DNA of 64,000 nucleotides from IMGVR_UViG_3300020473_001965:1-64000; one strand, 5' to 3'. Positions 28,781 through 47,015 are shown, counted from the first letter of the stretch. Numbers and translations are program-made. The notes: generated by a model from the letters alone, not told the origin.

Positions 28781-28910
28781 AAAAAGTTTTCGAAATTTTC
28801 TCCGGAAGAAATTTTTGAGTTTTACTTTTTTCCATTTTGAATAGCGCAGCTATTTTAGCTCTCTTCGTTGAAGGGGTAAAAAGTTTTCGGCAAGTTCTCC
28901 GGAAAAAAAT
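28781..28910. repeat. Imperfect direct repeat AAAAAGTTTTCG..TTCTCCGGAA(G/A)AAAT (x2)
   Basis: Copies at 28781 and 28878. Confidence 0.75.
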
Positions 28911-28920
28911 GCGTAGACTT

Positions 28921-29113
28921 AGGCCCATCCCAGGGGGTACCCCCCGACTGAATACGGGGGCTGGGGGGCCCCGCCCTCTGGGGCCGGGGGCCCTAGGCTC
29001 TAGATAGGGGGGCCTGGGGTAGGGCGCCCTAGGTCTGCACGGGTAGGGGCCCCCGGGGCTATGGTAGGGGCGCCCTTACTGTCACCGGTCATGTAGATGG
29101 GGCGCGCCCTAGG
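28921..29113. repeat. G-run and palindrome-rich block (GGGGGTACCCCC, TAGGGCGCCCTAGG variants); candidate genome terminus or packaging signal
   Basis: Non-coding, extremely GC-rich, repeated palindromes. Confidence 0.6.
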
Positions 29114-29387
29114 CCTGCATGAGCCGATTGTATGTCTCCCTAGGGATGAGCTTTCCCTCTACTGTGCCGTCGTAGTTCTTAAAGATAACGAAGTTAAAGC
29201 GATTCGACGGGACAAGCTTAACCAGCTCGCATGCCTGATGCTCATCCTCGGTTGTATAACTACCCATATCCCACAGGATGGTGAACCAGCCGTTGCCATG
29301 AACCTCTGTGACCTTCCCTTGATACTTCCTGCCACCGGCATATGTGATTCGGTCCTCTACCATGTCGCCTACTTTAAGCATTGTCAT
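29109..29387 (-). CDS. MKVGDLV-family KOW/SH3-like protein
   Basis: MLKVGDMV..GKV..ILWD. Confidence 0.7.
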   Translation of the reverse strand: MTMLKVGDMVEDRITYAGGRKYQGKVTEVHGNGWFTILWDMGSYTTEDEHQACELVKLVPSNRFNFVIFKNYDGTVEGKLIPRETYNRLMQA

Positions 29388-29406
29388 ACTCCTGCATTGC
29401 TTAGTG

Positions 29407-29443
29407 ACATTCTTATTATATCCCGCGCCGCGGCGTCTTACAT
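29407..29443 (-). promoter_or_regulatory. Repeated early promoter
   Basis: ATGTAA-N17-TATAAT; core identical to the 32151 copy. Confidence 0.75.
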
Positions 29444-29635
29444 TTAGCTCGTGACAACTGTTAGCCTTTTTTGCTCATGAACCGTTGTAGTGTCGCCTTC
29501 TAAGACTTCCCATGTACAGTACTCAGCATCGTAAGACAGTCGCTTGCGCCGTACGACGACCCCCACCCTGCCAGTGTCCAGCCTTCCTCCCCACCGAGAG
29601 ACCTTCCAGATCTTTACTAGATCACCGACTTTCAT
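29444..29635 (-). CDS. MKVGDLV-family cassette
   Basis: Starts in the ATGAAAGTCGGTGA overlap. Confidence 0.75.
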   Translation of the reverse strand: MKVGDLVKIWKVSRWGGRLDTGRVGVVVRRKRLSYDAEYCTWEVLEGDTTTVHEQKRLTVVTS

Positions 29636-29804
29636 TGATAACCTCTGCATTCACAAAATCAAGATCACTGCGGGTCCACGTATCAAATTCGCCATCAATA
29701 AGAAATTCAAACTTATAGCCATCTGCCCATGTACAAACACCAATCCAGCTGTGGCGATCCATTTCAGTGATATAATCTACTTTGACGCAATCACCGACTT
29801 TCAC
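29622..29804 (-). CDS. MKVGDLV-family cassette
   Basis: MKVGDCV...EVINESR. Confidence 0.75.
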   Translation of the reverse strand: MKVGDCVKVDYITEMDRHSWIGVCTWADGYKFEFLIDGEFDTWTRSDLDFVNAEVINESR

Positions 29805-29952
29805 TGATCACCTCTAAATCACGCAGAGAAAATTTCTCGCCACAATGCAGGATTACCCACGGGTGCCTTCGCGCCATGGGATTATCAGTAACAATCTCCA
29901 TAATTATTCCAGTTGTTCCATTTTTTAGTCTTACTAGATCACCGACTTGCAT
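29791..29952 (-). CDS. MKVGDLV-family cassette, 53 aa (not in ORF track)
   Basis: Hand-translated MQVGDLVRLK...LEVISESR. Confidence 0.75.
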   Translation of the reverse strand: MQVGDLVRLKNGTTGIIMEIVTDNPMARRHPWVILHCGEKFSLRDLEVISESR

Positions 29953-30118
29953 CGATCACCTCTTCAATTTGTGTATAGTGAAAAGCCTTCAACACACCGT
30001 CAACTTTGATAATAGGGTTCTTGAACGAATCCAGATCGACGACTAGTCCCAACTTGCCAGCTGAAGGACCGTTCCTTCGTGTCGAGTCGTGAAGCTTTAC
30101 TAGATCACCGACCTTCAT
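29939..30118 (-). CDS. MKVGDLV-family cassette, 59 aa (not in ORF track)
   Basis: Hand-translated MKVGDLVKLH...EEVIDASR. Confidence 0.75.
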   Translation of the reverse strand: MKVGDLVKLHDSTRRNGPSAGKLGLVVDLDSFKNPIIKVDGVLKAFHYTQIEEVIDASR

Positions 30119-30275
30119 TAATCACCTCAATCTGAGTCTCTGGCCAGACAACCATCGATCCATCACAGTCTAGAATATCCCACCAGCCTTCTGCAAACTC
30201 ACCATAACTGACTAGCACTCCGATTCGCTCTTTGTCGAAAGAGCCCATAAACTTTACAATGTCACCGACTTTCAT
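30105..30275 (-). CDS. MKVGDLV-family cassette, 56 aa (not in ORF track)
   Basis: Hand-translated MKVGDIVKF...IEVINEGR. Confidence 0.75.
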   Translation of the reverse strand: MKVGDIVKFMGSFDKERIGVLVSYGEFAEGWWDILDCDGSMVVWPETQIEVINEGR

Positions 30276-30465
30276 TGATGACCTCCATCAGAGATACCAT
30301 TGACTGGGTGAAGTCTCCGTTGTCCCAAAGGACGTCTGCACTCAGTTGCTTCCTCGTGCGACCACTGGTCCAGACCTGCATGACGACACCTGTCTGTCTC
30401 TCACCCGGTGTCACCGTCGATCCCCAAGTGCCTTTAAACTTTATCAGATCTCCAACCTTCAGCAC
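30262..30465 (-). CDS. MKVGDLV-family cassette
   Basis: MLKVGDLI...VLWDNG...EVINESR. Confidence 0.75.
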   Translation of the reverse strand: MLKVGDLIKFKGTWGSTVTPGERQTGVVMQVWTSGRTRKQLSADVLWDNGDFTQSMVSLMEVINESR

Positions 30466-30650
30466 ACCTTCTCCAACTCATCCTCGTCAAACTCAGCGAC
30501 CTGACCCAGAACCATGACTTTGGCTGCGGGAATGTAGAGCCGCTTTGCCAAAGCAATGACCACACCGATCTGGCCTTCTGCTTCCGGCCATGCAGAATGG
30601 ACACTGTTGTCATGAAGAATCCTGACCATGTCTCCTACAGCCAACTCCAC
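30459..30650 (-). CDS. MKVGDLV-family cassette
   Basis: ELAVGDMVRI..GVVI. Confidence 0.7.
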   Translation of the reverse strand: MELAVGDMVRILHDNSVHSAWPEAEGQIGVVIALAKRLYIPAAKVMVLGQVAEFDEDELEKVC

Positions 30651-30651
30651 T

Positions 30652-30765
30652 TCAGCACCCCACACAGTGCATGCACCATGGCATGTTGCAGGCTACCGCG
30701 ATGATGGCGGGAACGATTGCGATGATTGCGAGTGTTCTAGTGATGTCTTGAGCAGCTTGTGCCAT
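30652..30765 (-). CDS. 37-aa membrane peptide ending CMHCVGC (not in ORF track)
   Basis: MAQAAQDITRTLAIIAIVPAIIAVACNMPWCMHCVGC; GAGG RBS. Confidence 0.65.
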   Translation of the reverse strand: MAQAAQDITRTLAIIAIVPAIIAVACNMPWCMHCVGC

Positions 30766-30805
30766 TTTGAGTACCTCTTGGTGAGAGTGACGTAAGGCGT
30801 TTCCT

Positions 30806-30846
30806 CCTTACATTCTTATAATACCACGCTCACCCGAGTCTTACAC
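30806..30846 (-). promoter_or_regulatory. Repeated early promoter
   Basis: GTGTAA-N17-TATTAT with TG extension, ends GTAAGG. Confidence 0.8.
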
Positions 30847-31020
30847 TAACTCAAGCCACTCCGCCTTGACACACCACTGGCGTCCGTCTTCCCACATAAC
30901 GAGAATGTTGTCGTCTCTCATAAACTTCGGGAGGATCTTGACAACCAATCCGGAATGCGCGCGGTCTGGTTTGTGGCTGTACTTTACTAGAGAGCCTTCT
31001 TCGATTCTGGCTTTACCCAT
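30841..31020 (-). CDS. MKVGDLV-family cassette, 59 aa (not in ORF track)
   Basis: MGKARIEEGSLVKY..GLVV..VMWEDG..WLELV. Confidence 0.7.
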   Translation of the reverse strand: MGKARIEEGSLVKYSHKPDRAHSGLVVKILPKFMRDDNILVMWEDGRQWCVKAEWLELV

Positions 31021-31220
31021 ACTCCCTCCTTCATCCAGTAGTCGACGTCGCTACGAGAGACACCTTCAATTGAAGTCTCCAACGTCGTCCCCGGGATACC
31101 TGACCACAAGACCTCTACCCAATCACACGCTTCAGCGAACTCTTCGTCCGAGTCATAGGGCGTGATGTCCAGGATCACACCCGTCTCATCACCGCACTGC
31201 ACCAAGTCACCGACTTTCAC
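30987..31220 (-). CDS. MKVGDLV-family cassette
   Basis: MKVGDLV..GVIL..VLW. Confidence 0.75.
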   Translation of the reverse strand: MKVGDLVQCGDETGVILDITPYDSDEEFAEACDWVEVLWSGIPGTTLETSIEGVSRSDVDYWMKEGVWVKPESKKAL

Positions 31221-31410
31221 TGACTACCTCCAAAAACATTTCTTTCACTCTTCGCGTTGTCCCTGTCTCAGGCCACATGACGTGTACGATGTTGTACATA
31301 GAGTGCAGCCCTTGATCCTCATGCTTGACGACGATGCCGTGACCAGGTGGGTAGGCATGGATCCGACTCGAGTAGTTAACTATCTTTACTAGATCACCGA
31401 CTTTCATCAA
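31207..31410 (-). CDS. MKVGDLV-family cassette
   Basis: MKVGDLV...LEVVSESR. Confidence 0.75.
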   Translation of the reverse strand: MMKVGDLVKIVNYSSRIHAYPPGHGIVVKHEDQGLHSMYNIVHVMWPETGTTRRVKEMFLEVVSESR

Positions 31411-31624
31411 TCACCTCGAGCTCCACCACCGGGATGTTCAATTTGCAGTCGTCGTACATCACAACTGCATGCAGCTCCGGGTCTACCTCTCGCCAGTCAA
31501 TCATTGGACCCAGCTCATCTGTCCGCCAGACTTTCTTCTGAATCGTGTCGACAACAATTCCCGTACGGGTCGCGACCTGTTTTTCATCGATCTTCTTTAG
31601 TCTTACCAAATCACCTGTCTTCAT
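31394..31624 (-). CDS. MKVGDLV-family cassette
   Basis: MKTGDLV...LEVIDESR. Confidence 0.75.
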   Translation of the reverse strand: MKTGDLVRLKKIDEKQVATRTGIVVDTIQKKVWRTDELGPMIDWREVDPELHAVVMYDDCKLNIPVVELEVIDESR

Positions 31625-31802
31625 GTACTCTCTCCACTCTTTCTCGCATAATCCAGTTGCACCTGCCATCAGCCCACAGTACGACTGGGTCACGCCTCCC
31701 CGGCCGTGGGTCTGATCCTTGATTGTCTGACCAATCGATAACAACCCCTGTCATCCGACTCTCCGAAAAGAGGTTCTTCACTAAGTCACCAATCTTCAGC
31801 AT
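31611..31802 (-). CDS. MKVGDLV-family cassette
   Basis: MLKIGDLV..VLWADG..HEDR. Confidence 0.75.
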   Translation of the reverse strand: MLKIGDLVKNLFSESRMTGVVIDWSDNQGSDPRPGRRDPVVLWADGRCNWIMRERVERVHEDR

Positions 31803-31972
31803 GCCAATCTCAACTCGTCTTCCCATACACCAATCATATGCCCATCGTCCCAAAGGATCACGCAGAAACAGTACTCACCGTTAACTGTGTGCTCGGTTTC
31901 GACAACAATGCCAACCGGAAGTCCTTCGACCCCCGGTTCGCGTTTCATCTGTACGAGATCTCCTACGTTCAC
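31796..31972 (-). CDS. MKVGDLV-family cassette, 58 aa (not in ORF track)
   Basis: GTG start NVGDLVQM..GIVV..ILWDDG. Confidence 0.7.
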   Translation of the reverse strand: MNVGDLVQMKREPGVEGLPVGIVVETEHTVNGEYCFCVILWDDGHMIGVWEDELRLAC

Positions 31973-31983
31973 TCAGCTCTCCG

Positions 31984-32103
31984 TCAGTGTCCTGGGCAGT
32001 GCATGCAAAGATCGAGCACTTCAGCCAAAACGATGATTGTTGGGAACATAGCGACGATCACCGTTCCAGTGATCTGATCTTGATATTTCTTGAGTGTTTC
32101 CAT
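31984..32103 (-). CDS. 39-aa membrane peptide ending CMHCPGH (not in ORF track)
   Basis: METLKKYQDQITGTVIVAMFPTIIVLAEVLDLCMHCPGH; AAGGA RBS. Confidence 0.65.
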   Translation of the reverse strand: METLKKYQDQITGTVIVAMFPTIIVLAEVLDLCMHCPGH

Positions 32104-32150
32104 TGTCTCTTCCTTGGTGAGGAGGTTACGTTAGTAAGGTTGTTTTCCTT

Positions 32151-32191
32151 CCTTACATTCTTATTATATCCCGCGCCGCGGCGTCTTACAC
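32151..32191 (-). promoter_or_regulatory. Repeated early promoter
   Basis: 41-bp family copy. Confidence 0.8.
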
Positions 32192-32195
32192 TGGA

Positions 32196-32390
32196 TTACT
32201 CAGATTCCTTTACCACCTCGAGCCAGTCAGCCGGCTCCCAGTCTACGACCAGAGAGTCACACCACATCACACCGACTCGCCGCATGTTCCCACTAATCTT
32301 CTGGCGATCGTCAACAATTAGTCCAACCGATGGCGGCTCACCGCATGGGATCGATTCACCCGGCATTATGACGAGATCACCGGCTTTCAC
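32196..32390 (-). CDS. MKVGDLV-family cassette
   Basis: MKAGDLV..GLIV..VMW..WLEVV. Confidence 0.75.
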   Translation of the reverse strand: MKAGDLVIMPGESIPCGEPPSVGLIVDDRQKISGNMRRVGVMWCDSLVVDWEPADWLEVVKESE

Positions 32391-32690
32391 TTACGCCTCC
32401 CCCGACGCAGAGGACGACCCAGTCTCGGGTTGCGCTTCTTTACGAAGTTCCGATCGTGGTACCAAGCAGCACCGCAAGCCAGCAACACCGAGAACATCAG
32501 CATCATGAACGCTGAGAACTGAAAAAAGAATGATACTTCAGGACAATACATTATGCTGCTACCCTCCGAAACTTGAGGCGCACGTTCTTCGCTCCGCGAC
32601 TGCGCCAGATGTTGAACTGCCTGAAAGCCTCATCGCAGCTGTACGTGCCACTGTAGTGGCCACCGATAAACAACTCGTACTTGACCCGCA

Positions 32691-32858
32691 CTACTTCACC
32701 TCAGTGAGCGCGCTGGGAATGTGACGAGACAAATGATTTGACATGTCCCACTTGACGAGAATGATCGGGGTCTCATTGCCCCACTTCTTAGTCTTCGCCA
32801 ACACCCGACCAATTTGGCCGGGATAGCTGACATGCGTTACGCGAGCTCCAACCTTCAT
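32691..32858 (-). CDS. MKVGDLV-family cassette
   Basis: MKVGARV..GRV..VKWD. Confidence 0.7.
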   Translation of the reverse strand: MKVGARVTHVSYPGQIGRVLAKTKKWGNETPIILVKWDMSNHLSRHIPSALTEVK

Positions 32859-32950
32859 GAGATCACCTGTGCGATCGCCATGCAAACGCCGAGCTCTGAG
32901 ACGACGCCGAGGTATCCGAGAAGAATGTAGTTTCCGATTTGTTCAGTCAT
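32855..32950 (-). CDS. 31-aa hydrophobic peptide (not in ORF track)
   Basis: MTEQIGNYILLGYLGVVSELGVCMAIAQVIS; AAGGA RBS. Confidence 0.55.
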   Translation of the reverse strand: MTEQIGNYILLGYLGVVSELGVCMAIAQVIS

Positions 32951-32990
32951 GTTATTTCCTTGGTGAGGAGTTGATTTGTGGTAGGACCAT

Positions 32991-33031
32991 CCCTACATTT
33001 ATATAATACCACAACTTACCAAGTCTTACAT
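32991..33031 (-). promoter_or_regulatory. Repeated early promoter
   Basis: 41-bp family copy. Confidence 0.75.
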
Positions 33032-33107
33032 GAAAAAGCGAGGGATGATTCGTCTACCAACGTCGGAAGGCAGCATCCTCCGAATCTCGGCTCTCCCTCG
33101 GGAACCA

Positions 33108-33395
33108 TTACTGTTTATTATCTTCCTGTTTTCCCATTGGCGTATACCAGCTGGGCTTATTTTGCTCCATAATGATTGAAGCCTCCTTCATTATCTGCAG
33201 AATCTTGTCCGCTTGCTCCTCTGCTGTGCCGTTCACAAAACCTTCCAGCTCCTGCGGATGCGCTTCGAAGTAAAGCCGTCCGACCGTCATCTTCTCAGCT
33301 TCGGTCATCGACTCAACATTCCAGTACTTGTCTATGGCACACTTCTTCTTCCATGCGTAGTAAGCAGTGCACCCTCCAATAATCAGCTCTATCAT
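33108..33395 (-). CDS. Hypothetical protein
   Basis: ATGA-coupled to the upstream gene. Confidence 0.55.
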   Translation of the reverse strand: MIELIIGGCTAYYAWKKKCAIDKYWNVESMTEAEKMTVGRLYFEAHPQELEGFVNGTAEEQADKILQIMKEASIIMEQNKPSWYTPMGKQEDNKQ

Positions 33396-34153
33396 CGCCG
33401 GGACTGCCTTTTGCGCAGTCGCTTCGAGCTCACCGTCTGAGGCAATCCGTTGCACAAGATATCTTGCACGACTTCTGAGTATTGCGCTGTCACGTACGGG
33501 TCACTCGTTACAATAGCAGCATCATTATTCCATACCGCCAAGTCACCCTCAGAAAAACGAGGCTCAGTCAGGGTCTTAACAGCACCCTTGAACATGTTCT
33601 TGAGGCGGGACAACGCGCGGTTATCGAGAGTCCCGTGTGTGTCGTAGAACGCTTGAGCTGAACGATACTGCCTATAGTGACCCTGACGATGCTGCCAGTA
33701 CCAGTCACCGCGCTTCGTCCCATAGATGAGAAGTGCCTCTACGAGTCGTCGCTCATCATCGGTGAGCACGGGCAGACCATTGTCAGCCAACTCTTTGGCT
33801 TGTTCCAAGAGGCTAGTTAGAAAAGCCTCTTGCTTCGGGGAAAGTCGCCAGCCCTTCGACAACTTGTACTTGAAGTCACCGAGTGGTCCGGCCATGGCCT
33901 CCATCCCGGGCGTCACCATTGCTCGCTCAATCTCCGCAGTACGGTCAGCGTTATGAACGACAGGAGCACCCTGCTCGATCAGGCTGTCCAAGTACTTACG
34001 CTGGCCGGCCGAAAGACCCTTGTTGCGCTCGAGACGCGCGATCATGTCAGTCACGAATCGAGCCGACTTGTCATGCTCCATCCCAGCGTCAACCCAAAGC
34101 ACTAGCGTCTCCTTGGCCTCGCGCAACCGAACTTCCCGAGATTTCCTAGCCAT
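33392..34153 (-). CDS. Hypothetical early protein with C-terminal KOW-like segment
   Basis: GGAGG RBS; FSEGDLAVW..AIV. Confidence 0.7.
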   Translation of the reverse strand: MARKSREVRLREAKETLVLWVDAGMEHDKSARFVTDMIARLERNKGLSAGQRKYLDSLIEQGAPVVHNADRTAEIERAMVTPGMEAMAGPLGDFKYKLSKGWRLSPKQEAFLTSLLEQAKELADNGLPVLTDDERRLVEALLIYGTKRGDWYWQHRQGHYRQYRSAQAFYDTHGTLDNRALSRLKNMFKGAVKTLTEPRFSEGDLAVWNNDAAIVTSDPYVTAQYSEVVQDILCNGLPQTVSSKRLRKRQSRR

Positions 34154-34286
34154 TATCGACCTCCATCGATGAGAATAAAAAGTGTCATGACAACCGGTAG
34201 CGGCCACCAAAGTTTCAGAAGTTTCAAAGCGACCTGTCCCATCAGGATCCAGGTACCAGCATCAGCAAGATTCTCCACAGCGTTCT

Positions 34287-34327
34287 CCTTACTTTCTAAT
34301 AATATCACGCTATGGCTTATCTTACAC
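34287..34327 (-). promoter_or_regulatory. Repeated early promoter
   Basis: 41-bp family copy. Confidence 0.8.
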
Positions 34328-34542
34328 TAAGCTGTCATCATTTCTTTGGGTACTTTAGCTTTTGTCTCAATCTCATTGAGGAGCCGACTGAGAGACGTCA
34401 CCTCGTCGACTTCTTGTTCAAACGTAGCACCGTCAGCTAGTCGCTGCCTGCATGCTTGGTAAGCTTTATTTAGTTTCGTCCAACGCTCGAGTTCTGCGAG
34501 CCCGAGGTTCGTGTATACATACGACGCAGCAGATCCCATCAT
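34327..34542 (-). CDS. Hypothetical protein
   Basis: GGAG RBS. Confidence 0.55.
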   Translation of the reverse strand: MMGSAASYVYTNLGLAELERWTKLNKAYQACRQRLADGATFEQEVDEVTSLSRLLNEIETKAKVPKEMMTA

Positions 34543-34552
34543 TATCTCCGTT

Positions 34553-34840
34553 CTAAACTAGTTTGATGAGTTTTATCGAATTGAGCGCCTGCTCCAGGTA
34601 GATCCTTTGTTGTTTGAGTTGTGCTACCTGTGTGTCAATAGTGGCACCTGACTCATGCAGGCAACCGAGTGGTGCCAAGTCTGCTTCTGTTCCTTTGCGC
34701 TCGAGTTGATCGACTACAAGTGAGATCCGCGAGCGAATGTTTGTGAGATTTGTCTTGAGCGTAATCGCAGTCTTTTCAAGTGCAGCTCTAGCTTCACCCA
34801 TCTCCTGCGCCATTACAGCCAGCTTGTCATAATCTTCCAT
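34553..34840 (-). CDS. Hypothetical coiled-coil protein
   Basis: Directly after a promoter-like GTGTAC..TACAAT. Confidence 0.6.
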   Translation of the reverse strand: MEDYDKLAVMAQEMGEARAALEKTAITLKTNLTNIRSRISLVVDQLERKGTEADLAPLGCLHESGATIDTQVAQLKQQRIYLEQALNSIKLIKLV

Positions 34841-34890
34841 GCTTTATTGTATCGTGAACACACTATAGTGTACACCTGAAAGCAAACTTT

Positions 34891-35091
34891 TTATTGAGTC
34901 GCCGACTCCGCCTCATCTTCTTCGTTCCACATGATGAAACAACCGATCGTAGTGATGGGAATCCAGAAAACTGCAGGACCCCATGACACCCAAGAGTGAG
35001 CATCGACTCCAAACAGTTGCACGAACCATGCCCAACCGCACGGTGGAATCCAACAGGCGGTGACCCATTCAACAAAACGAGGTGGCAACAT
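34891..35091 (-). CDS. Trp-rich membrane protein
   Basis: AAGGAG RBS; hydrophobic. Confidence 0.55.
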   Translation of the reverse strand: MLPPRFVEWVTACWIPPCGWAWFVQLFGVDAHSWVSWGPAVFWIPITTIGCFIMWNEEDEAESATQ

Positions 35092-35196
35092 TACTGATCT
35101 CCTTGATAAACAGTTTTATGCTTTTGCTTTCTTGTATACTTCTTAGGGCTGTGAGCACCCGCTCCGGTTCTGAAGTGCGCTTGCACAGCGACCCAG

Positions 35197-35526: not shown

Positions 35527-35539
35527 GTATCAACTCATG

Positions 35540-35818: not shown

Positions 35819-35834
35819 TTTACTGCTTTCTTTT

Positions 35835-39878: not shown

Positions 39879-39890
39879 TGTGTACCTCCT

Positions 39891-39931
39891 TGGTTCTATC
39901 TAATAATACCACGCTGCGATGCGTTTTACAC
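39891..39931 (-). promoter_or_regulatory. Repeated early promoter
   Basis: 41-bp family copy. Confidence 0.75.
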
Positions 39932-40739: not shown

Positions 40740-40748
40740 TGGGTACCT

Positions 40749-40789
40749 CCTTACTTTCTTATTCTACCATGCTCCCACGTATCTTACAC
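40749..40789 (-). promoter_or_regulatory. Repeated early promoter
   Basis: 41-bp family copy. Confidence 0.8.
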
Positions 40790-41365
40790 GGAACCCGTGT
40801 GTATCATTGAGCGAACGGCAGTCCAGAACTCGATCTCATTAGTATGGTGACTCAGCTGCCTTCTCGAGTCATTCACTGATGTCCTCGATCGTTCGTCTAG
40901 CTTCTGAAGACAGGGCTCGAGCATTTCGTTGCCCGGCCCATAGACAAGCTTTACCCTGACATCCCCCGGCCGGGTGAGACGATGAAGATTGGTCAGCCAC
41001 TGAAAGAGGTAGTACGACACAGTCCTCGCTTCTTCTATGTTTGCAGCCGGAATGTAACCAGCAGGGGTATACCCAATAGTCACCTCATAGACTCCGCTTC
41101 CGCCCTCTTCTGACCGCTGGGTCACTAGAGGTTCTAGGGTGGACCATATCCTCTTTGCAGCTGTCCTCAACTCCTCGCGATCATCATCCGGCAAAGACCA
41201 TTGACTCAGTAGTCCAGACCCTTCAGGCCGGTGCTGCCAGACTTCTGTAAACAGCCCAGTCTCCACGTCATAGGCGTTTCTCAAATTGCTATCCCAAGCT
41301 TCGTCGACTGTAGGGGCGTATGTGATGTCCTCAAGCATTGTCTTGAGCAAGGACACTAGACCCAC
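40784..41365 (-). CDS. Hypothetical protein, paralogue of 44186-44923
   Basis: GVYEVTIGY..YIPAANIEEA. Confidence 0.65.
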   Translation of the reverse strand: MGLVSLLKTMLEDITYAPTVDEAWDSNLRNAYDVETGLFTEVWQHRPEGSGLLSQWSLPDDDREELRTAAKRIWSTLEPLVTQRSEEGGSGVYEVTIGYTPAGYIPAANIEEARTVSYYLFQWLTNLHRLTRPGDVRVKLVYGPGNEMLEPCLQKLDERSRTSVNDSRRQLSHHTNEIEFWTAVRSMIHTGSV

Positions 41366-41562
41366 CTGTCTAGTCGAGTAGAGTGCTCGAGCTTAGTTTC
41401 CTCTTCCTCTTCAACCTCAACCGGTGTTGGCTCCAGGTATGGGTCTAGACTATCGCCCCTGATCCACATCCCAAACTGAGCACCCCACGTCGGATGAAGG
41501 CTGATAGCAATGAGGAAGCCCCAGACTCCGAATCCGATGATAGTGAATAGCGCTTCAACCAT
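41356..41562 (-). CDS. Small membrane protein
   Basis: N-terminal TM; TAATG coupling. Confidence 0.6.
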   Translation of the reverse strand: MVEALFTIIGFGVWGFLIAISLHPTWGAQFGMWIRGDSLDPYLEPTPVEVEEEEETKLEHSTRLDRWV

Positions 41563-42905
41563 TACGCCGCCTCCTTGCTTGCATTGCCCTTCAGCTCCAC
41601 GACTGTGTCACCGCGGTGTGCGTCGAAGTACAGCTTGCGTCCCGGGACGATCACCCATGCCCGACGCATGCGGGAGGGACCAGGGTCGGCAGCCTCCCCG
41701 TCGGTGCAGACGATGTAGCCATCGAAGCGGTGACGGTTCTCTTCAGCGTGCCGAGCAACTGCCCTGAAGCACGTGCCGCCGCAGCGGAAGCGGTTGAGCT
41801 TCGAGCGCGAGCCCTTCTTCCAGACGATCTCATTGTCGGTGTCAACCGTGCTGTCGAATGGGTAGAAGGTGAACGTTACCTTGCGTGCCAGCTGCTCCAG
41901 CTCTGCGTAGAGCAGTGCCAGCGACTCATCATCAACCGAGCCACTCTGATCGACGTAGACTGCCACGTTGGCGCTGTGACCAATCTTGCGGCCGCTGTGG
42001 ATGTAGGGGTACTTGCGGTTGAGACGCTTCATGGTGCGGCTCTTGTTAGCGCGCTGACTCATGCCAACGAAGTTACGAAGGACTGCGCGCCAGTCAACCT
42101 CATTCGAGCACATCCGACGGAGCTCGCTCCGCATCTCAGCGGGCACCGAGCCCCACTGGCCCTTGCTGTCACACTTCTTGACTGCGTTCTTGAGGGCTTG
42201 CTTGACCTTGCCCTTGACGAGCTCCTTCTCAGCGTCGGTAGCACCCTCGCCCCACTCACCGTGGTCGTCCATGGTACCGGGAACGCCGTCTCCCTCTCCG
42301 GGCTGGCCGCCTTGGCCGTCGCCACCAGTGAGATCGTCCTTCATCTGCTCGTCATCCATCAGCTGGCCGAAGTACCACTCCGCGCTCATGTTCGGCGGGA
42401 AGCTTTCAATCTTTGCCGAGATGCGATCGAAGCGTGCCTTGGCCTGCTCATCGAGCTTGGCGTACGCATCCGGATCGATGTGGATGGCCTGGCCAGGAAT
42501 GAGACCACCCTTGGGAAGCTCCTCCACTGGGATGATCGAGTTGATCGCGAGGTCGGTCGCGTAGTTGTGAACGATGTGCGGGGTCTTCTTGCGGCTAGTC
42601 GTGTGCTCGAAGACCAGGTGGTACACCTCGTGCTTGAGAAGTCCCTTTACTTCTTTGTTGCTCAGCGAGGCGAGGAAGCGGCGGTTCCACCACATCTTGA
42701 TATCACCGTCCTTGGCGAGCACGCCGGCGGTCGGGATCGAGTCCGTCTCCACCTTGGTGACGTCACGAAGCATGGCCGAGAAAAAGGGCTCATCCCACAT
42801 CAACGCTGTGAGGTGGTTGCCAAGGTCGAAAGCAGCGAGCTCCGCGTCGGTCAGCTCTGCGCCTGGTGCCACTGGGATGTCGGTCGAGGTAGTGTTGTCA
42901 GCCAT
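41562..42905 (-). CDS. DUF2201-type metallopeptidase-VWA protein
   Basis: HEVYH, NYATDLAIN, DQSGS MIDAS, GGT, TDG. Confidence 0.88.
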   Translation of the reverse strand: MADNTTSTDIPVAPGAELTDAELAAFDLGNHLTALMWDEPFFSAMLRDVTKVETDSIPTAGVLAKDGDIKMWWNRRFLASLSNKEVKGLLKHEVYHLVFEHTTSRKKTPHIVHNYATDLAINSIIPVEELPKGGLIPGQAIHIDPDAYAKLDEQAKARFDRISAKIESFPPNMSAEWYFGQLMDDEQMKDDLTGGDGQGGQPGEGDGVPGTMDDHGEWGEGATDAEKELVKGKVKQALKNAVKKCDSKGQWGSVPAEMRSELRRMCSNEVDWRAVLRNFVGMSQRANKSRTMKRLNRKYPYIHSGRKIGHSANVAVYVDQSGSVDDESLALLYAELEQLARKVTFTFYPFDSTVDTDNEIVWKKGSRSKLNRFRCGGTCFRAVARHAEENRHRFDGYIVCTDGEAADPGPSRMRRAWVIVPGRKLYFDAHRGDTVVELKGNASKEAA

Positions 42906-42914
42906 TTGTTATCT

Positions 42915-42955
42915 CCTTACTATCTAATAATATCACGCTGCGCCGAATCTTACAC
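42915..42955 (-). promoter_or_regulatory. Repeated early promoter
   Basis: 41-bp family copy. Confidence 0.85.
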
Positions 42956-43016
42956 CAAAGCGCGCCAGCTCCACCACAGAGCTGACGCTTTGGCACACCC
43001 TCTAGCGAGGACTGAA

Positions 43017-44045
43017 TCATGAACGGCTAGCCTGAACGGCCTCGACGACCTTCTTACCGATGAGCTTGTGAAGCTTCTGGATGTTCTTCAGGTTGGAAGT
43101 ACCAGACACCTGGTTCCAGAGGTGAACGAGCATCTCGGAGCTAGGAAGAGCGTTGGCGAACGCGGCCACGTTGGCAGCCTGGCTGGCCTTCCACTCGTTG
43201 TCCTTGCAGTGAGCTGCGAGCTTGCCGATCAGGCCGTTGACCTTGGAGGCCTCGAAGCCCTTGATCTGCTCCGCCACTGCCTCGAAGTTGTCGAGCACGT
43301 CCTCAGCGGACACCTCGTTCTCCCAGTTCTTGGCGAACTCCACCAGCGAGATGGCAGCTTCAACACCGACCATACCCAGAGCGACCGGGTACCACACGTC
43401 GGAAGGCTGCTCCACCTCACCCATGTGCTTGAGGCTCAAGTCAAGGCGTTCCCACGAAGCGGGGTTCGGGGCGACCTTGCCAGGCTCCGTCGCTGCGGTA
43501 GGACGAAGGTGCTCCTCGTGCTGACGAATGAAGTCGACGATGACAGGGGCCAGACGACCCTCAGCCCAGTCGAGGAAGTCAGCGTGAGTCGGCTCCAACT
43601 CAATGCTCCAGAAACGACGGAGAAGAGCAGGGTCCATCTCGTTGACCTCGTACTCGGCACCAACGTTGACCGCCGCGAAGACGCGGGTGTCAGGGTGCAG
43701 CTTGTGACCGTTGAGCTCCCGGTCCAGGACGATCTGGAACGCAGCCTGAATGACCTCGGGGGTCGCACGGTTGAGCTCGTCCATGAAGAGGACGACTGGC
43801 TCACGGCAAGCTTGAGCGTACCAGTCTGGCGGGCAGAAGCGAGTGGTACCATCGACCAGCTCGGGGAGACCAACCATGTCACCTTCGCTCATTTGCGACA
43901 GGCGGCGGTCGATCACCGGCAGCTCCAACCCGGCTGCGATATCCTTGACGAGGTACGACTTACCGATACCGGTAGGACCTTGAATGAGGACCGCAATCTC
44001 TGCGGGGAGGCGAGGGGCGATGTTGTTGAAAGTCTTGATGTCCAT
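43017..44045 (-). CDS. MoxR-type AAA+ ATPase
   Basis: GPTGIGKS, LFMDELNRA, MDPALLRRF, PNPASWE. Confidence 0.9.
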   Translation of the reverse strand: MDIKTFNNIAPRLPAEIAVLIQGPTGIGKSYLVKDIAAGLELPVIDRRLSQMSEGDMVGLPELVDGTTRFCPPDWYAQACREPVVLFMDELNRATPEVIQAAFQIVLDRELNGHKLHPDTRVFAAVNVGAEYEVNEMDPALLRRFWSIELEPTHADFLDWAEGRLAPVIVDFIRQHEEHLRPTAATEPGKVAPNPASWERLDLSLKHMGEVEQPSDVWYPVALGMVGVEAAISLVEFAKNWENEVSAEDVLDNFEAVAEQIKGFEASKVNGLIGKLAAHCKDNEWKASQAANVAAFANALPSSEMLVHLWNQVSGTSNLKNIQKLHKLIGKKVVEAVQASRS

Positions 44046-44082
44046 GCTAGTTTCCTTGGTTAGAGGGGGTGTGTTTTTGTTT

Positions 44083-44123
44083 CCTTACTATCTAATAATA
44101 TCACGTCGCGACGGGTCTTACAC
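44083..44123 (-). promoter_or_regulatory. Repeated early promoter
   Basis: 41-bp family copy. Confidence 0.85.
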
Positions 44124-44185
44124 CGTTTTCACCGCTTATTAGTAAGTATTCTGTTCAACGGTGAAACTCTGCGGTGGAGCTGCCG

Positions 44186-44923
44186 CTAGGCAGCGTCCTC
44201 TTCGTCGTTCTCGAGAATGCCCATCGTCATCGCGAGGGCGAGGCACGCCTCTTCCTTCTCACGCCGGAGGTTCGCGAGCTTCGACTCATGACGCTCGATC
44301 TCGTCTTGGATTCGCTGGTCGTAGCGATCGGCGCCGCTGTTGCTCTGAAGTCGCTCAGCATTCGCGATCGTCGGGTAGGTCTCCCAGCTGATGCGCATGC
44401 GATCCGGGTCTAGACCCAGCGGGCCGACGAGCATCGCGCTCGCGAGCTGCTCTGCTTCTGCGACGTTCTTTGCCGGAATGTACGCGATGGTACGGTACCC
44501 GCAGCTGATCTCGTAGAGACCGATGACAGTGTCTTCATGACGATGCTGATAGTTGCGCATGTACCTCACGCGGTTGTACACGCGGTCGTCGAGGCGGTTC
44601 TCGCGGCGGACCTTAGCCTTGTACGAGCTCTTCTTGCCTTTGCGGCGCTCCAGCTCATCCGCGTGCCAATCCACCGCATCACTCGAGTTCACGAAGCCAA
44701 GGGCGTGGATCTGATCGAACGTGTAGCCCCAAAGCTGACAGTCGTCATTCTCGTTGACGTACTTGTCGCGGTACTTGTTGTACCGGTCGCACCAGACTTC
44801 TTTTCGGACCACGCGCGGCGGTCCGTGCGGGCTCCTGCCCAGCGTGCCCTTCGGCTTCGCCTGCAACAGGTCGTCAATGATGGCGAATCGGGTCGCGCTC
44901 GGGGTCGGTACGAATGGCTTCAT
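44186..44923 (-). CDS. Hypothetical early protein
   Basis: AAGGAG RBS; GLYEISCGY..YIPAKNVAEA. Confidence 0.7.
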   Translation of the reverse strand: MKPFVPTPSATRFAIIDDLLQAKPKGTLGRSPHGPPRVVRKEVWCDRYNKYRDKYVNENDDCQLWGYTFDQIHALGFVNSSDAVDWHADELERRKGKKSSYKAKVRRENRLDDRVYNRVRYMRNYQHRHEDTVIGLYEISCGYRTIAYIPAKNVAEAEQLASAMLVGPLGLDPDRMRISWETYPTIANAERLQSNSGADRYDQRIQDEIERHESKLANLRREKEEACLALAMTMGILENDEEDAA

Positions 44924-44945
44924 ATGTCTGTTCTCCTTAGTGATT

Positions 44946-44986
44946 CCTTACTATCTAATAATACCATGCGCCGGCGGGCTTTACAC
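44946..44986 (-). promoter_or_regulatory. Repeated early promoter
   Basis: 41-bp family copy. Confidence 0.85.
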
Positions 44987-45002
44987 CAAACGCCGCTCCG
45001 CT

Positions 45003-45242
45003 TCAGCGGTGGCAACCGTCGTCACGCCAGACGATCGTCCCACGCTTCGTGTTCATGTAGTCACTGATCACCAGCAGCTCACCATCGGGGTGCGGGTGCG
45101 CGGCGACCACGCAGTAGTCGTACGCGTCCAGGACATATGTCTCGAAGGCATGCAGAGTCCTCGCCTTGTGGGCCAGTACCCGAAGCTCCGCCGCTGGGAT
45201 TCTCTGTCTCTTGCTGCTCATCACGTTCTCCTTTGTGCGCAT
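45003..45242 (-). CDS. Hypothetical protein
   Basis: AAGGAG RBS before MSSKR. Confidence 0.55.
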   Translation of the reverse strand: MRTKENVMSSKRQRIPAAELRVLAHKARTLHAFETYVLDAYDYCVVAAHPHPDGELLVISDYMNTKRGTIVWRDDGCHR

Positions 45243-45245
45243 TCT

Positions 45246-45698
45246 TTACGCTCCGTATCCGTACTCTTCTGCCTTCGCCTCGTAGATCTCCCACTGCTCC
45301 AGCTCATATCCACCATTTGGGCGCAAGCCCAATGCGACTTCCTCACGGTCCTGCCGCTCCTGCTCAGCCAGCCACGCCGCCTCGGCCTCCCACTGCTCCT
45401 TCGCAGTCTCCGCCATGCGCACGTTCGCAGCCCAGACCTCTTCGAGGGTCATGTCCTCGTGGGGCATGCGCTTGCAACCCCACACGTCCTTGTGCCACTC
45501 ACAGTACGCATCGCGAGCCGAGCTCAGCTCCAACTCATAGACATTGGCGTACTCTTCCGCCAGGTCTTCCGACATGTTGGTCCAGAAGTCCCAGCCCTCC
45601 GCCACTGCCTGCGCATCGCGCGCGGCGTTCTGCGCCCGGATGTAACCCAGGACGTCAGTGTTTCCGAGGAGGCCAAGTTCGCGGGTGGTGAGGGTCAT
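45246..45698 (-). CDS. Acidic, Trp-rich hypothetical protein; first gene of the early island
   Basis: GGAG RBS after promoter 45739. Confidence 0.7.
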   Translation of the reverse strand: MTLTTRELGLLGNTDVLGYIRAQNAARDAQAVAEGWDFWTNMSEDLAEEYANVYELELSSARDAYCEWHKDVWGCKRMPHEDMTLEEVWAANVRMAETAKEQWEAEAAWLAEQERQDREEVALGLRPNGGYELEQWEIYEAKAEEYGYGA

Positions 45699-45738
45699 GC
45701 TAAGCTCCGATTCTGCGCCGGCCGAGTTGCCGCCGATT

Positions 45739-45779
45739 CCTTACTATCTAATAATATCACGCGGGCTCGAGTCTTACAC
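45739..45779 (-). promoter_or_regulatory. Repeated early promoter
   Basis: 41-bp family copy. Confidence 0.85.
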
Positions 45780-45941
45780 AAAAACGCGCGTTACTCCGAT
45801 ATCAATATCCGGGCAACATCCGATATCACCTCCCGCCGGGAACACGGGAAGACGCTGAGCACGCGCGCTGCGACCCTGCGTAAATATTTTGCGCCCCTCA
45901 CCCGGTGCCGCGCGGTGGTGGAGCTCAGACCAGGAGACGTT

Positions 45942-45961
45942 GAAAGTGATAATCATTATCA
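45942..45961. promoter_or_regulatory. Fur-box-like operator
   Basis: GAAAGTGATAATCATTATC is 17/19 to GATAATGATAATCATTATC; perfect TGATAAT-C-ATTATCA. Confidence 0.7.
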
Positions 45962-45969
45962 AAAACTAA

Positions 45970-45987
45970 TGAATGAACATTCATTCA
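45970..45987. promoter_or_regulatory. Perfect inverted repeat TGAATGAA-CA-TTCATTCA (TetR-type operator-like)
   Basis: Seen directly. Confidence 0.55.
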
Positions 45988-46060
45988 CTCACACGTCCGC
46001 GCGGCCCGGGCCACCCATGAACGCACATTCACTCCGGGCCGCGCTAAATGTTGATTCGAC

Positions 46061-46297
46061 TCAGCTCTGCTGATGCTTACGCAAAGGCTCTCGAATCCAG
46101 TCAGTAGCTTCCTTACCGATCGGGAGCCGGCCGAGCACGGGTTCGTGTGTACCCTTAGAGCATGCCAACACCCAGCCGTCGTCGACTAATCCCTTCGCGT
46201 GCTCCCACATAACGTCTGAGTCGTGTGGGCCGATGACGCAACGATACTTCAATTCAACGCTACCTCGCTCAACAAATATTACTGTCCAAATCAACAC
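46061..46297 (-). CDS. Hypothetical protein
   Basis: GAGGTG RBS, GTG start. Confidence 0.5.
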   Translation of the reverse strand: MLIWTVIFVERGSVELKYRCVIGPHDSDVMWEHAKGLVDDGWVLACSKGTHEPVLGRLPIGKEATDWIREPLRKHQQS

Positions 46298-46784
46298 TCA
46301 CCTCAATAAAATTAATTTTTGCCCACCCTGAACCCGTGCCACTTTATCGGTCGAAACCGGTGCACACCACGCCACTACTTCGCTCGGGGGATGAGCTTCA
46401 GTGCACGCCAAACGTCGATGCCCGAGGGTCACCGCGAAACCTCCTACTCTTTATCTTACCGCAGGGAGCGACAGTGTACACTTTGCGAGTCTTTTTTTAT
46501 TTTTACAACAAAAACGTGTACAATATGTGAGCCCGGGCTAAGTACGCTAGTCCCCCGATTCCCGTCAGTTTTCGACCTGTCAATGCGTACGCTGACCCGA
46601 GTACTCGCGGAGGGGGCGTGTCGAGGGCTGCTCTACGGGCTACCATGCGTGGCCATTTAGCCACGTGCCATTGATCATGGGGAGTACCCAAGTCCGCTTT
46701 TTTAGAGTGTACGAAAAGCCCGGGCAAAAGTACCTCTGGTCGACGAAGAGAGAGATAGCCCTCGTTACCCAATGCTAGTGCGCG

Positions 46785-46995
46785 AGTAACGGGTCGTCGA
46801 CGAGTAACTTGCGGGCATTAGTTACTTGCGGGCCCGAGGAAAAGTTACTTGCGGGCAGGGCGCAAGCGCGAGCAAAGCTGGGCACAAGTTACTCGTCGTC
46901 TGAGGAAAAGTTCGAGGAAAAGTAACTTGTCGAAGGGTCGCGTGTCGTTCCCTCTCTATACGAGTATGAGTACGAGGACGAGTTACTTGTCGTCC
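46785..46995 (+). repeat. Cluster of AGTWACTTG repeats; three carry the extended CGAGGANNAGTWACTT motif
   Basis: Copies at 46803, 46820, 46843, 46887, 46921, 46981. Confidence 0.8.
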
Positions 46996-47015
46996 CCCAC
47001 TCTCTTCCTTTCTCT

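What the first reader, a model, noticed from the sequence alone, without database searches (positions are those of the whole stretch)
28781..47000. About 18-kb GC-rich early (host-takeover) island, possibly a collapsed long terminal repeat
Seen: a segment bracketed by two unusual non-coding repeat regions, entirely minus-strand, made of short units each headed by the same promoter, with much higher GC than the left arm (line 42301: 38/60 GC; line 8461: 16/60). Known: SPO1 and T5 keep early genes in long direct terminal repeats. Inference: DNA entry starts near 46-47 kb and proceeds leftwards.
Basis: partly seen in the sequence, partly recalled or inferred. Interest (0 to 1): 0.7.

Follow-up and report, generated by a model that had tools for sequence, protein, structure and literature searches.

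The report
Early-gene island, probable collapsed terminal repeat
An 18-kb block of an uncultured marine jumbo phage (about 300 kb) carries 14-15 copies of one host-type promoter, many small unknown genes and four tRNA genes, and is sequenced about twice as deeply as its flanks with no alternative junctions. It is most likely the phage's early region lying in a long terminal repeat that assembly collapsed, an arrangement already known from SPO1, T5 and XacN1.

Summary
Window 28.8-47.0 kb is bracketed by two conserved non-coding repeat regions. It holds 14-15 of the genome's roughly 21 copies of one sigma-70-like, extended -10 promoter, and it forms the only GC hump in a 236-kb record (peak 0.60 against about 0.41). 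Two qualifiers apply: almost the whole genome is minus-strand, and the GC rise is a gradient from about 25 to 54 kb, not a block. In the probable source run, depth is 11.8 | 21.9 and 19.9 | 12.1. A second run steps from about 4 to about 7.5 between 28866 and 28889, and back down at 46843-46865. Two more runs give about 1.5x. GC is equal on both sides of the left step. At least five independent assemblies cross both edges with no alternative junction. That combination fits a collapsed direct terminal repeat of about 18 kb. It argues against GC bias, a second dispersed or tandem copy, and a chimeric join. Early timing, host takeover and the direction of DNA entry remain inferences. An extra finding is a conserved GC3 gradient (0.78 falling to 0.37) whose top genes avoid the codons read by the phage's own tRNAs. 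Verdict: a new member of a known kind, of moderate interest.

The parts
28880..46860 (-). Putative long direct terminal repeat unit (about 18 kb), collapsed to one copy in the assembly. It coincides with the promoter-dense early-gene island. The edges are approximate.
   Evidence: Contig k-mer depth. X1: 11.8 (17.9k-29436), 21.9 (29413-32.2k), 19.9 (36.9k-45492), 12.1 (45463-49.6k). X2: 4.1 (28370-28866), then 7.58 (28889-29436); 7.99 (45788-46865), then 4.08 (46843-47363).. Assemblies cross both edges unbroken.
28694..29108 (.). Left bracket, a conserved non-coding element. It has two 32-nt direct repeats (28780-28811, 28877-28908), each with TTCCGGAGAA and CGAAAACTTTTTA on the minus strand, followed by a G/C-rich run of palindromes (CCTAGG, GGGCCC, GGGCGCCC) at about 28915-29108.
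   Evidence: D13; the motif is unique in the genome. Its core is about 93% identical to relative G1, whose coding genes are 68-80% identical. It is kept at 80-84% in four other metagenome contigs in which one flank differs.
29401..45781 (-). Fifteen promoter copies. Plus-strand spans: 29401-29445, 30804-30848, 32149-32193, 32989-33033, 34285-34329, 35256-35300 (weak), 36766-36810, 38387-38431, 38972-39016, 39889-39933, 40747-40791, 42913-42957, 44081-44125, 44944-44988, 45737-45781. Each has a GTGTAA box, a 17-nt GC-rich spacer, an extended -10 (TGnTATTAT) and a conserved short leader ending in a TAAGGAG ribosome-binding site.
   Evidence: Shuffles give 0-0.8 hits. The standard TTGACA/TATAAT scan misses them because the -35 box is non-canonical.
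29109..32390 (-). Tandem array of about 13 small paralogous genes (53-90 aa; MKVGDLVK...EVIxESR). Successive genes overlap by about 14 nt.
   Evidence: HMM built from island copies and alignment A2. The AlphaFold model has pLDDT 86 and is a five-stranded SH3/KOW-like barrel with only generic structural matches. No Pfam or PHROG family.
35835..36890 (-). tRNA cluster: Leu(UAA) 35835-35921, Met(CAU) 35928-36005, Lys(UUU) 36178-36253, Arg(UCU) 36814-36890.
   Evidence: ARAGORN and Rfam. G1 keeps Arg(UCU) and Lys(UUU) in the same place.
37596..38345 (-). RecA-superfamily ATPase (KaiC/RadA-Sms-like P-loop domain only), 249 aa.
   Evidence: Pfam PF06745, 1.9e-12. TIGR00416 RadA, 1.4e-33, below the cut-off. 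phrog_26214.
41562..44045 (-). Gene pair: MoxR-type AAA+ ATPase (43017-44045, 342 aa) and a DUF2201 metallopeptidase-like/VWA-like protein (41562-42905, 447 aa). Each has its own promoter.
   Evidence: Pfam AAA_5 at 2.6e-14, DUF2201_N at 3.4e-18 and DUF2201 at 1.1e-7. phrog_1297 and phrog_1314. The pair is conserved in G1, G2 and G3.
44186..45698 (-). First promoter-headed genes after the right bracket: 150 aa (45246-45698), 72 aa (45003-45221) and 245 aa (44186-44923). Functions are unknown. GC3 is 0.78-0.80, the highest in the genome.
   Evidence: The 245-aa protein has only 13 unnamed metagenomic homologues. No family or fold lead was found.
45782..47015 (.). Right bracket. It has two non-coding stretches (45782-46060, 46298-47015) around one small ORF (46061-46297). 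It contains an AT-rich tract flanked by GTGTACA (about 46470-46530), a possible variant promoter (about 46435-46478) and an array of AGT(T/A)ACTTG near-palindromes at 46798-46990.
   Evidence: Patches are conserved with G1. The depth step and three contig ends fall at 46843-46865.

Best explanation
The segment is the early-transcribed region of a roughly 300-kb uncultured marine myovirus. It most probably lies in a direct terminal repeat of about 18 kb (about 28.88-46.86 kb) that short-read assembly collapsed to one copy.

Proposed mechanism. The packaged DNA is linear and carries the block at both ends. On entry, the host RNA polymerase with its primary sigma factor fires 14-15 near-identical extended -10 promoters. 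Each promoter is fused to a short leader with a strong ribosome-binding site, giving many short leftward transcripts. These transcripts encode small lineage-specific proteins (about 13 of them SH3-like paralogues), a MoxR-ATPase/VWA pair, a RecA-family ATPase and four tRNAs. The genes nearest the right edge use GC-ending codons and almost never use UUA, AAA, AGA or ACA. The bulk of the genome prefers those codons, and the phage's tRNAs read them. A phage sigma-factor gene sits behind a promoter of the same type at 102 kb and would pass transcription on to later genes. The two conserved non-coding brackets would be the cis sites at which the repeat ends are made.

Shown: the promoter array, the gene content, the composition gradient and its conservation, the roughly 2x depth, and the unbranched edges. 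Inferred: the physical ends, early timing, host-takeover function, the role of the brackets and the direction of entry.
For: Depth. In X1 (probable source run) depth runs 11.8, 21.9, 19.9, 12.1 across the four contigs. The 36-nt promoter repeat, present twice in the island, has depth 43.5, which is 2 x 21.9. X2 steps from about 4.0 to about 7.4 at 28866/28889 and from 7.99 to 4.08 at 46843-46865. X3 and X4 give about 1.5x. GC is 0.47-0.50 on both sides of the left step.

Unbranched edges. X1 contigs, the JGI record, the 296,665-bp ENA contig and Tara/MEGAHIT contigs spanning 49.1 to 27.5, 47.98 to 27.65 and 49.1 to 36.4 kb all cross the edges at 100% identity. There is no second copy in the record.

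Recovery. In 12 shared runs the island's word share always exceeds the flank's; a Poisson model puts the depth ratio at a median of 1.8. Island proteins are found on 15-21 contigs, against 6-12 for flank proteins of similar size.

Promoters.. No multisubunit RNA polymerase was detected, and a sigma-70-family gene lies at 100985-101746.

Codons and tRNAs..

Conservation. The layout, GC hump and promoter type recur in three relatives. The left bracket is better conserved than the coding DNA around it.

Precedent. XacN1 is a jumbo myovirus with 29% terminase identity to this phage. Its 66-kb DTR carries tRNAs, collapsed in the first assembly and was found through 2x coverage.
Against: The depth figures are whole-contig mean k-mer depths, not per-base read depth, and the tool itself warns that they are not copy numbers. 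The edges are located mainly by one low-coverage run (X2, 4x against 7.5x). No read termini or long reads could be examined.

The word-share and contig-count excess could partly reflect higher conservation of island genes among strains. The AAA ATPase protein is identical on contigs that are only about 98% identical in DNA.

Contig ends also cluster at 27.5 and 28.3 kb, outside the edges.

The large terminase is gp17-like (45% to Microcystis phage Mel-JY01, 30% to T4-like cyanophages). In T4 this type goes with headful packaging (T4 behaviour is background knowledge).

The GC gradient runs beyond both proposed edges. No expression data exist. No homologue of a proven takeover gene was found.
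Confidence: 0.58

Rival explanations
1. An internal, single-copy early-gene region. The depth excess would be an artefact of k-mer depth in metagenomes: flanks thinned by strain microdiversity or sequence-dependent bias, and the island more conserved among co-occurring strains.
For: Island core proteins are identical across strains that differ by about 2% in DNA. Flank coverage holes recur at the same places (27.4-27.8 kb) in X2-X4. The terminase is gp17-like. Only contig-mean depths are available.
Against: X1 shows about 12 against about 20-22 on long contigs identical to the window, with no variant contigs or 'other letters' laid on the flanks and no branch at the edges. Flanks diverged by more than 5% would branch, those at 3-5% would be laid and reported, and those under 3% could not halve the mean k-mer depth. 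The ratio is similar in four runs. GC is equal across the left step.
Confidence: 0.2
2. Headful (pac-type) packaging with about 6% terminal redundancy and few headfuls per concatemer. Packaging would start at a pac site in the 46.8-47.0 kb repeat array and run leftwards, so the first roughly 18 kb is present twice in most particles. One edge would be sharp and the other fuzzy.
For: The terminase is gp17-like. The iteron-like array at the right edge resembles a binding site for a small terminase subunit. This model would also give no new junction.
Against: The left step in X2 looks as abrupt as the right one, falling within 23 nt, and it coincides with a strongly conserved cis element. Both points are weak, given the 4-8x depth.
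Confidence: 0.14
3. A recently acquired GC-rich foreign island, or a chimeric assembly join.
For: There is a large local GC excess, and the genes are mostly without relatives.
Against: The same junctions occur in at least five independent assemblies. The layout, promoter type and GC/GC3 hump are conserved in relatives with 50-74% protein identity. The promoter and the small-gene family also occur elsewhere in the genome. No close relative was found in 185,579 species genomes.
Confidence: 0.03
4. The promoters are not immediate-early. The invariant GTGTAA box, in place of a canonical -35, would be the site of a phage-encoded activator or sigma appropriator, as with the T4 MotA box, making this a delayed or middle class. 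This is compatible with either genome structure.
For: The box matches TTGACA at only 3 of 6 positions yet is more conserved than an extended -10 promoter should need. It is conserved as GTG(T/C)AA in relatives.
Against: Nothing in the region is recognisable as an activator. A phage sigma-factor gene lies downstream of a promoter of this type, which fits a first-tier class better. The strong extended -10 suits unmodified host polymerase (background knowledge).
Confidence: 0.15

Closest known systems
Bacillus phage SPO1 terminal redundancy (13,185 bp) with its host-takeover module
   Same: A long exact terminal repeat is packed with short early transcription units, many strong host-sigma promoters and small genes without relatives. 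PMC5852040 summarises that the SPO1 DTRs encode functions for early subversion of the host. Promoter density and gene size here are comparable.
   Different: No sequence relationship was found with any takeover gene. The virion module here is gp23/gp17-like. The island also holds tRNAs and a steep GC3 gradient. The repeat is inferred from depth, not mapped.
Xanthomonas jumbo phage XacN1 66-kb DTR (and vB_PcaM_CBB, 22 kb)
   Same: XacN1 is a jumbo myovirus with a distantly related capsid (35% identity) and terminase (29%, E 6e-66). Its DTR collapsed in the first assembly and was recognised through 2x coverage. The DTR carries tRNA genes for codons that the phage uses more than its host does.
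   Different: The repeat here is about 18 kb with 4 tRNAs, against 66 kb with 28 tRNA genes and one tRNA pseudogene per repeat unit. The XacN1 DTR is only about 3 GC points richer than its unique DNA, against up to about 19 here. No single-promoter array is reported for XacN1.
Phage T5 long terminal repeat with pre-early genes (first-step transfer)
   Same: The idea is the same: the first DNA to enter is a terminal repeat that carries the first-expressed genes (background knowledge).
   Different: There is no evidence here for two-step DNA transfer or for homologues of A1, A2 or dmp. T5 is a siphovirus with an unrelated terminase clade.
T4-type early and middle promoters, and cyanophage or jumbo-phage tRNA sets matched to phage codon usage
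   Same: The promoters are sigma-70-dependent with a strong extended -10, and a phage-specific box may replace the -35. Phage tRNAs read A-ending codons favoured by an AT-richer phage. Codon-usage differences between early and late phage genes are documented (PMC5683454).
   Different: There is no T4 late motif: TATAAATA occurs once on the coding strand. The codon shift here is tied to position in the island, not to promoter class. Genes behind the same promoter elsewhere have GC3 of 0.36-0.49.

Membership tests
Long direct terminal repeat of a linear phage genome | About twofold sequencing depth over the repeat, with sharp edges | tested here: met
   Measured with contig k-mer depth only. X1 gives 11.8 | 21.9, 19.9 | 12.1. 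X2 steps from about 4 to about 7.5 at 28866/28889 and back at 46843-46865. X3 and X4 give about 1.5x. Per-base depth was not available.
Long direct terminal repeat of a linear phage genome | No junctions other than the two seen in the collapsed assembly, which excludes a tandem or dispersed second copy | tested here: met
   X1 contigs and at least five other assemblies cross both edges at 100% identity. No second copy exists in the record.
Long direct terminal repeat of a linear phage genome | Physical DNA ends at the two repeat borders (read-start pile-ups, long-read termini, restriction or PFGE mapping) | not testable with these tools
   All holders are kept as Logan contigs, not reads, so table 6 is empty by construction. 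The phage is uncultured.
Long direct terminal repeat of a linear phage genome | A large terminase from a clade that makes fixed repeats | tested here: inconclusive
   TerL (210753-212375) is gp17-like. It is 45% identical to Mel-JY01, 41% to immuto, 30% to T4-like cyanophages (headful in T4) and 29% to XacN1 (proven DTR).
Phage early / host-takeover gene module (SPO1 or T5 type) | A dense cluster of host-holoenzyme promoters heading short units of small genes | tested here: met
   There are 14-15 copies in 16.4 kb against about 6 in the remaining 219 kb. Most ORFs are 40-150 aa and unannotatable.
Phage early / host-takeover gene module (SPO1 or T5 type) | Transcription in the first minutes of infection, independent of phage protein synthesis | not testable with these tools
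   The metatranscriptome runs from the same sample hold none of the sequence.
Phage early / host-takeover gene module (SPO1 or T5 type) | Homology to proven takeover genes, or demonstrated shut-off activity | tested here: not met
   Pfam, PHROGs and NCBIfam give only a MoxR ATPase, DUF2201/VWA and a RecA-family ATPase. Nothing matches known shut-off proteins. The resemblance is one of organisation, not of family.
Horizontally acquired genomic island / assembly chimera | Absent from relatives, or joined differently in other assemblies | tested here: not met
   G1 is collinear across both edges. G2 and G3 keep the core and the GC hump. Independent assemblies agree.

The most novel reading that the evidence does not exclude
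The terminal repeat of this phage lineage carries a conserved, position-dependent composition gradient. GC3 is 0.78-0.80 at the promoter-proximal end and decays to the genomic 0.37. The first-expressed genes almost completely avoid the four codons (UUA, AAA, AGA, ACA) that the phage's own tRNAs read. Four of those tRNA genes lie in the same repeat. This could reflect a built-in translational hand-over from the host's tRNA pool to the phage's. Alternatively it could be the footprint of GC-biased recombination or conversion acting on a repeat that is recombined in every generation. Genes behind the same promoter elsewhere in the genome are not GC3-rich, so the effect follows position rather than expression class. 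The usual codon-adaptation account does not predict that.
Probability: 0.3. Interest if true: 0.6.

Novelty: new member of a known kind. Interest (0 to 1): 0.45.

Why it matters
Genome ends and early programmes are almost never known for uncultured marine jumbo phages. Here a collapsed repeat, its likely border elements and a complete early-promoter set can be read from public metagenomes. That corrects the genome map: about 18 kb more DNA per particle, a doubled dose of early genes and tRNAs, and a real linear start point. It also gives a defined promoter and leader cassette and a set of about 45 candidate takeover genes for testing once a host is found. The conserved GC3 gradient inside the repeat offers a testable case for two competing ideas: temporal matching of codons to tRNA supply, and recombination-driven GC enrichment in phage terminal repeats.

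Tried and rejected
- Megablast of 41-47 kb against 50,697 phage records found no match.
- A second copy of the island in the 236-kb record: only 28-50-nt promoter repeats were found.
- The contig breaks in X1 at 29407-29442 and 45463-45492 are not repeat borders. The first is the 36-nt promoter duplicate (29407-29442 = 32155-32190). The second is a 30-mer shared with a co-occurring, AT-richer relative.
- GC bias as the sole cause of the depth step is rejected, because GC is equal across the left step.
- Tandem or dispersed duplication is rejected, because contigs cross the edges.
- Host-derived DNA: no relative was found in the genome-contig collection.
- Rfam finds nothing in either bracket.
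- One viral-contig scan was wasted on a pattern with a wrong gap length. The corrected pattern found five metagenome contigs.
- A promoter-leader scan of IMG/VR found multiple copies only in G1.
- The T4 late motif is absent.
- Pfam, PHROGs and NCBIfam gave nothing for 30 island and flank proteins beyond the three ATPase/VWA hits and a methyltransferase.
- The fold search on the small-protein family returned only generic SH3-like barrels.
- The protein-atlas search for the 245-aa protein returned only low-scoring leads.
- Contig extents as evidence for the edges are mixed. Some contigs match the island plus or minus 1-2 kb, and others do not.
- SPAdes coverage values could not be paired within one assembly.
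- The PF00940 search for a single-subunit RNA polymerase is uninformative, because its control did not ring.

Full report
**Context.** The window is the first 64 kb of a 235,672-bp linear IMG/VR record that CheckV rates 87% complete. The phage is marine and uncultured. It has a gp23-like capsid protein, a portal, a tail sheath, a DnaE-type polymerase and a ribonucleotide reductase, so it is a jumbo myovirus. Its nearest cultured relatives are distant. Microcystis phage Mel-JY01 and Flavobacterium phage immuto reach 35-46% identity for capsid and terminase, and T4-like cyanophages about 30%. A longer assembly of the same phage exists as a 296,665-bp ENA contig, offset by 5,359 bases from the window.

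**The observation.**
- GC climbs from 0.33-0.45 to a peak of 0.60 at 42-46 kb and falls back. No other part of the record exceeds 0.47. The rise is a gradient that starts near 25 kb and ends near 54 kb, not a block with the stated borders.
- The island's genes are all on the minus strand, but so is nearly the whole genome.
- A 45-nt promoter-plus-leader element occurs 14 times between 29.4 and 45.8 kb, plus one weak copy. It consists of a GTGTAA box, a 17-nt spacer, an extended -10 (TGnTATTAT) and a short conserved leader ending in TAAGGAG. About six weaker copies lie elsewhere, each correctly placed before a gene. Shuffled sequence gives fewer than one hit.
- Both brackets are real non-coding repeat regions.

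**Content.**
- The left third is a tandem array of about 13 overlapping genes for 53-90-aa proteins. These model confidently as five-stranded SH3/KOW-like barrels with only generic structural neighbours.
- The middle holds four tRNA genes, Leu-UAA, Met, Lys-UUU and Arg-UCU, and a RecA-superfamily ATPase.
- The right third holds a MoxR-type AAA+ ATPase with a DUF2201 metallopeptidase/VWA partner, and three unknown genes next to the right bracket.
- Nothing resembles a proven host shut-off protein.
- The record encodes a sigma-70-family protein at 100985-101746. It lies in a unit headed by a promoter of the island type. No multisubunit RNA polymerase was detected. This fits a cascade that starts with host holoenzyme at these promoters, but it is an inference.

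**The terminal-repeat question.** Only Logan contigs, not reads, were available, so I used the mean k-mer depth of contigs that match the window without differences.
- In X1, the probable source run, an 11.5-kb contig ending at 29436 has depth 11.8. The next contig (29413-32.2 kb) has 21.9. An 8.6-kb contig ending at 45492 has 19.9, and the next (45463-49.6 kb) has 12.1. The 36-nt promoter duplicate, present twice in the island, has 43.5, exactly twice the island value.
- The two X1 break points are explained by that duplicate and by a 30-mer shared with an AT-richer relative. They are not the borders themselves.
- In X2, where contigs are short, depth goes from 3.4-4.6 to 7.6 between 28866 and 28889. 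It goes from 8.0 to 4.1 at 46843-46865. X3 and X4 give about 1.5x.
- GC is the same (0.47-0.50) on both sides of the left step, so GC bias does not explain the step.
- A tandem or dispersed second copy would force branches at the borders. Yet X1's contigs, the JGI record, the 296-kb contig and several Tara/MEGAHIT contigs run through both borders at 100% identity.
- A mixture of two strains with an identical island but different flanks is hard to fit to X1, which shows no branches and no variant contigs laid on the flanks.
- Doubled depth without any new junction is the signature of a collapsed direct terminal repeat. XacN1's 66-kb DTR was found in exactly this way (PMC5852040).

**Supporting evidence that is confounded.** The island's share of sampled words exceeds that of the right flank in all 12 shared runs, and a Poisson model gives a median depth ratio of 1.8. 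Island proteins are recovered on two to three times as many contigs as flank proteins of similar size. Both results could partly reflect stronger conservation of island genes among strains.

**Evidence against.** The terminase is gp17-like. It is, however, as close to XacN1's terminase (29%, E 6e-66) as to those of the T4-like cyanophages, so it does not discriminate. A pac-initiated headful mechanism with about 6% redundancy remains a rival, because it also creates no new junction.

**Relatives.** Contig G1 (35 kb, 74% identity for the DUF2201 protein) is collinear with window 50.7 to 18.8 kb. It has the same promoter in 15 copies, the same GC hump, two of the tRNAs and the same GC3 profile. 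Two more distant contigs keep the ATPase/VWA/RecA-like core, a similar promoter and a smaller hump in a rearranged context. The left bracket is about 93% identical between the window and G1, whereas the coding DNA is 68-80% identical. It persists at 80-84% in four further metagenome contigs in which one flank differs. It is therefore a selected cis element and a mosaic joint, consistent with a repeat border or a packaging site. Patches of the right bracket are also conserved. Its near-palindromic unit recurs in intergenic positions up to 54.6 kb.

**Composition.**
- The GC excess sits mainly at third codon positions: 0.77 at 41.5-46 kb against 0.33-0.37 in the bulk. GC1 rises modestly, and GC2 is flat.
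- In the 41.5-45.7 kb genes, UUA, AAA, AGA and ACA make up 0, 4, 2 and 6% of their codon families. In the rest of the genome they make up 20, 52, 46 and 48%. The phage's tRNAs read those same codons.
- Within the island, GC3 falls with distance from the right bracket (rho 0.40, p 0.018).
- Genes behind the same promoter type elsewhere have GC3 of only 0.36-0.49.
- The non-coding promoter spacers in the island are also GC-rich.

The effect therefore follows position rather than promoter class. Translational selection before the phage tRNAs act, and recombination-linked GC enrichment of a terminal repeat, both remain open. Recent foreign origin is unlikely. The XacN1 DTR is only about 3 GC points above its unique DNA.

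**Verdict.** The reading as an early region in a collapsed long terminal repeat is the best-supported explanation (about 0.6), but it rests on coarse depth data. Early timing, takeover function and the direction of DNA entry are untested. In kind this is the SPO1/T5/XacN1 arrangement in a new, uncultured marine lineage. The conserved GC3 gradient is the unusual part.

Noticed in passing
window 5354-5720 (-): The phage encodes a full-length one-piece tmRNA (Rfam 111.7 bits) with tag ANNNYHYEQRLAA. Relatives G2 and G3 also carry tmRNAs, with different tags (ANDNVAYEYALAA and ANNNNFYNVALAA). The 296-kb ENA contig starts inside this gene.
   Followed up: partly
window 46798-46990, 48023-48049, 49620, 50802-50812, 51724-51731, 54585: A second regulatory motif has the core AAGT(T/A)ACTT, often within CCGACAAGTTACTTGTCCTCG. 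It forms an array at the right bracket and occurs as single intergenic copies before genes of the 47-55 kb flank. Several of those genes are about 250-aa proteins with similar N-termini (starts at 49348, 50370 and 51586). It looks like an operator or a second promoter class.
   Followed up: partly
G000 100985-102094 (locus L084): A sigma-70-family gene (Sigma70_r2, E 8e-22) lies second in a unit headed by a promoter of the island type at 102050-102094. A separate Sigma70_r4 protein is encoded beyond window position 1, on contig L048.
   Followed up: partly
window 5.9-13.9 kb (from gene calls on locus L049): This stretch holds genes with Pfam hits to PrkA (AAA_PrkA/PrkA), SpoVR, peptide deformylase, an RNaseH-like domain and a chlamydial Hc1 histone-like domain. 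Further left are DDAH-like and DUF5995 genes. It is an unusual auxiliary set for a phage.
   Followed up: no
window 58.0-63.6 kb; G000 72.0, 82.4-83.6 kb: Further copies of the SH3-like small-protein family lie outside the island, with lower GC3 (mean about 0.44) than the island copies (about 0.53).
   Followed up: partly
window 45463-45492 and runs X1-X3: A co-occurring relative with AT-richer synonymous sites shares a 30-mer inside the 150-aa gene. Its contig is 1,778 nt with depth 6.8 in X1. The shared 30-mer breaks the assembly graph at this point.
   Followed up: partly
window 28295-28434 (-): Two strong intrinsic-terminator hairpins (9 and 11 bp stems followed by T-runs) lie just downstream of the 77-aa gene 28460-28693. 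That gene is the first one outside the left bracket and has its own TTGTACA-type promoter.
   Followed up: no
window 15859-17514 (+); G000 111451-113073 (+): These are rare long plus-strand ORFs (551 and 540 aa) in an otherwise one-stranded genome. The first lies in a local patch of positive GC skew and has no Pfam hit. They could be mobile or spurious.
   Followed up: partly
window 27.4-27.8 and 28.3-28.6 kb: Coverage holes recur in runs X2-X4, and contig ends cluster here in several Tara assemblies. This suggests a strain-variable or hard-to-sequence patch in the left flank.
   Followed up: no
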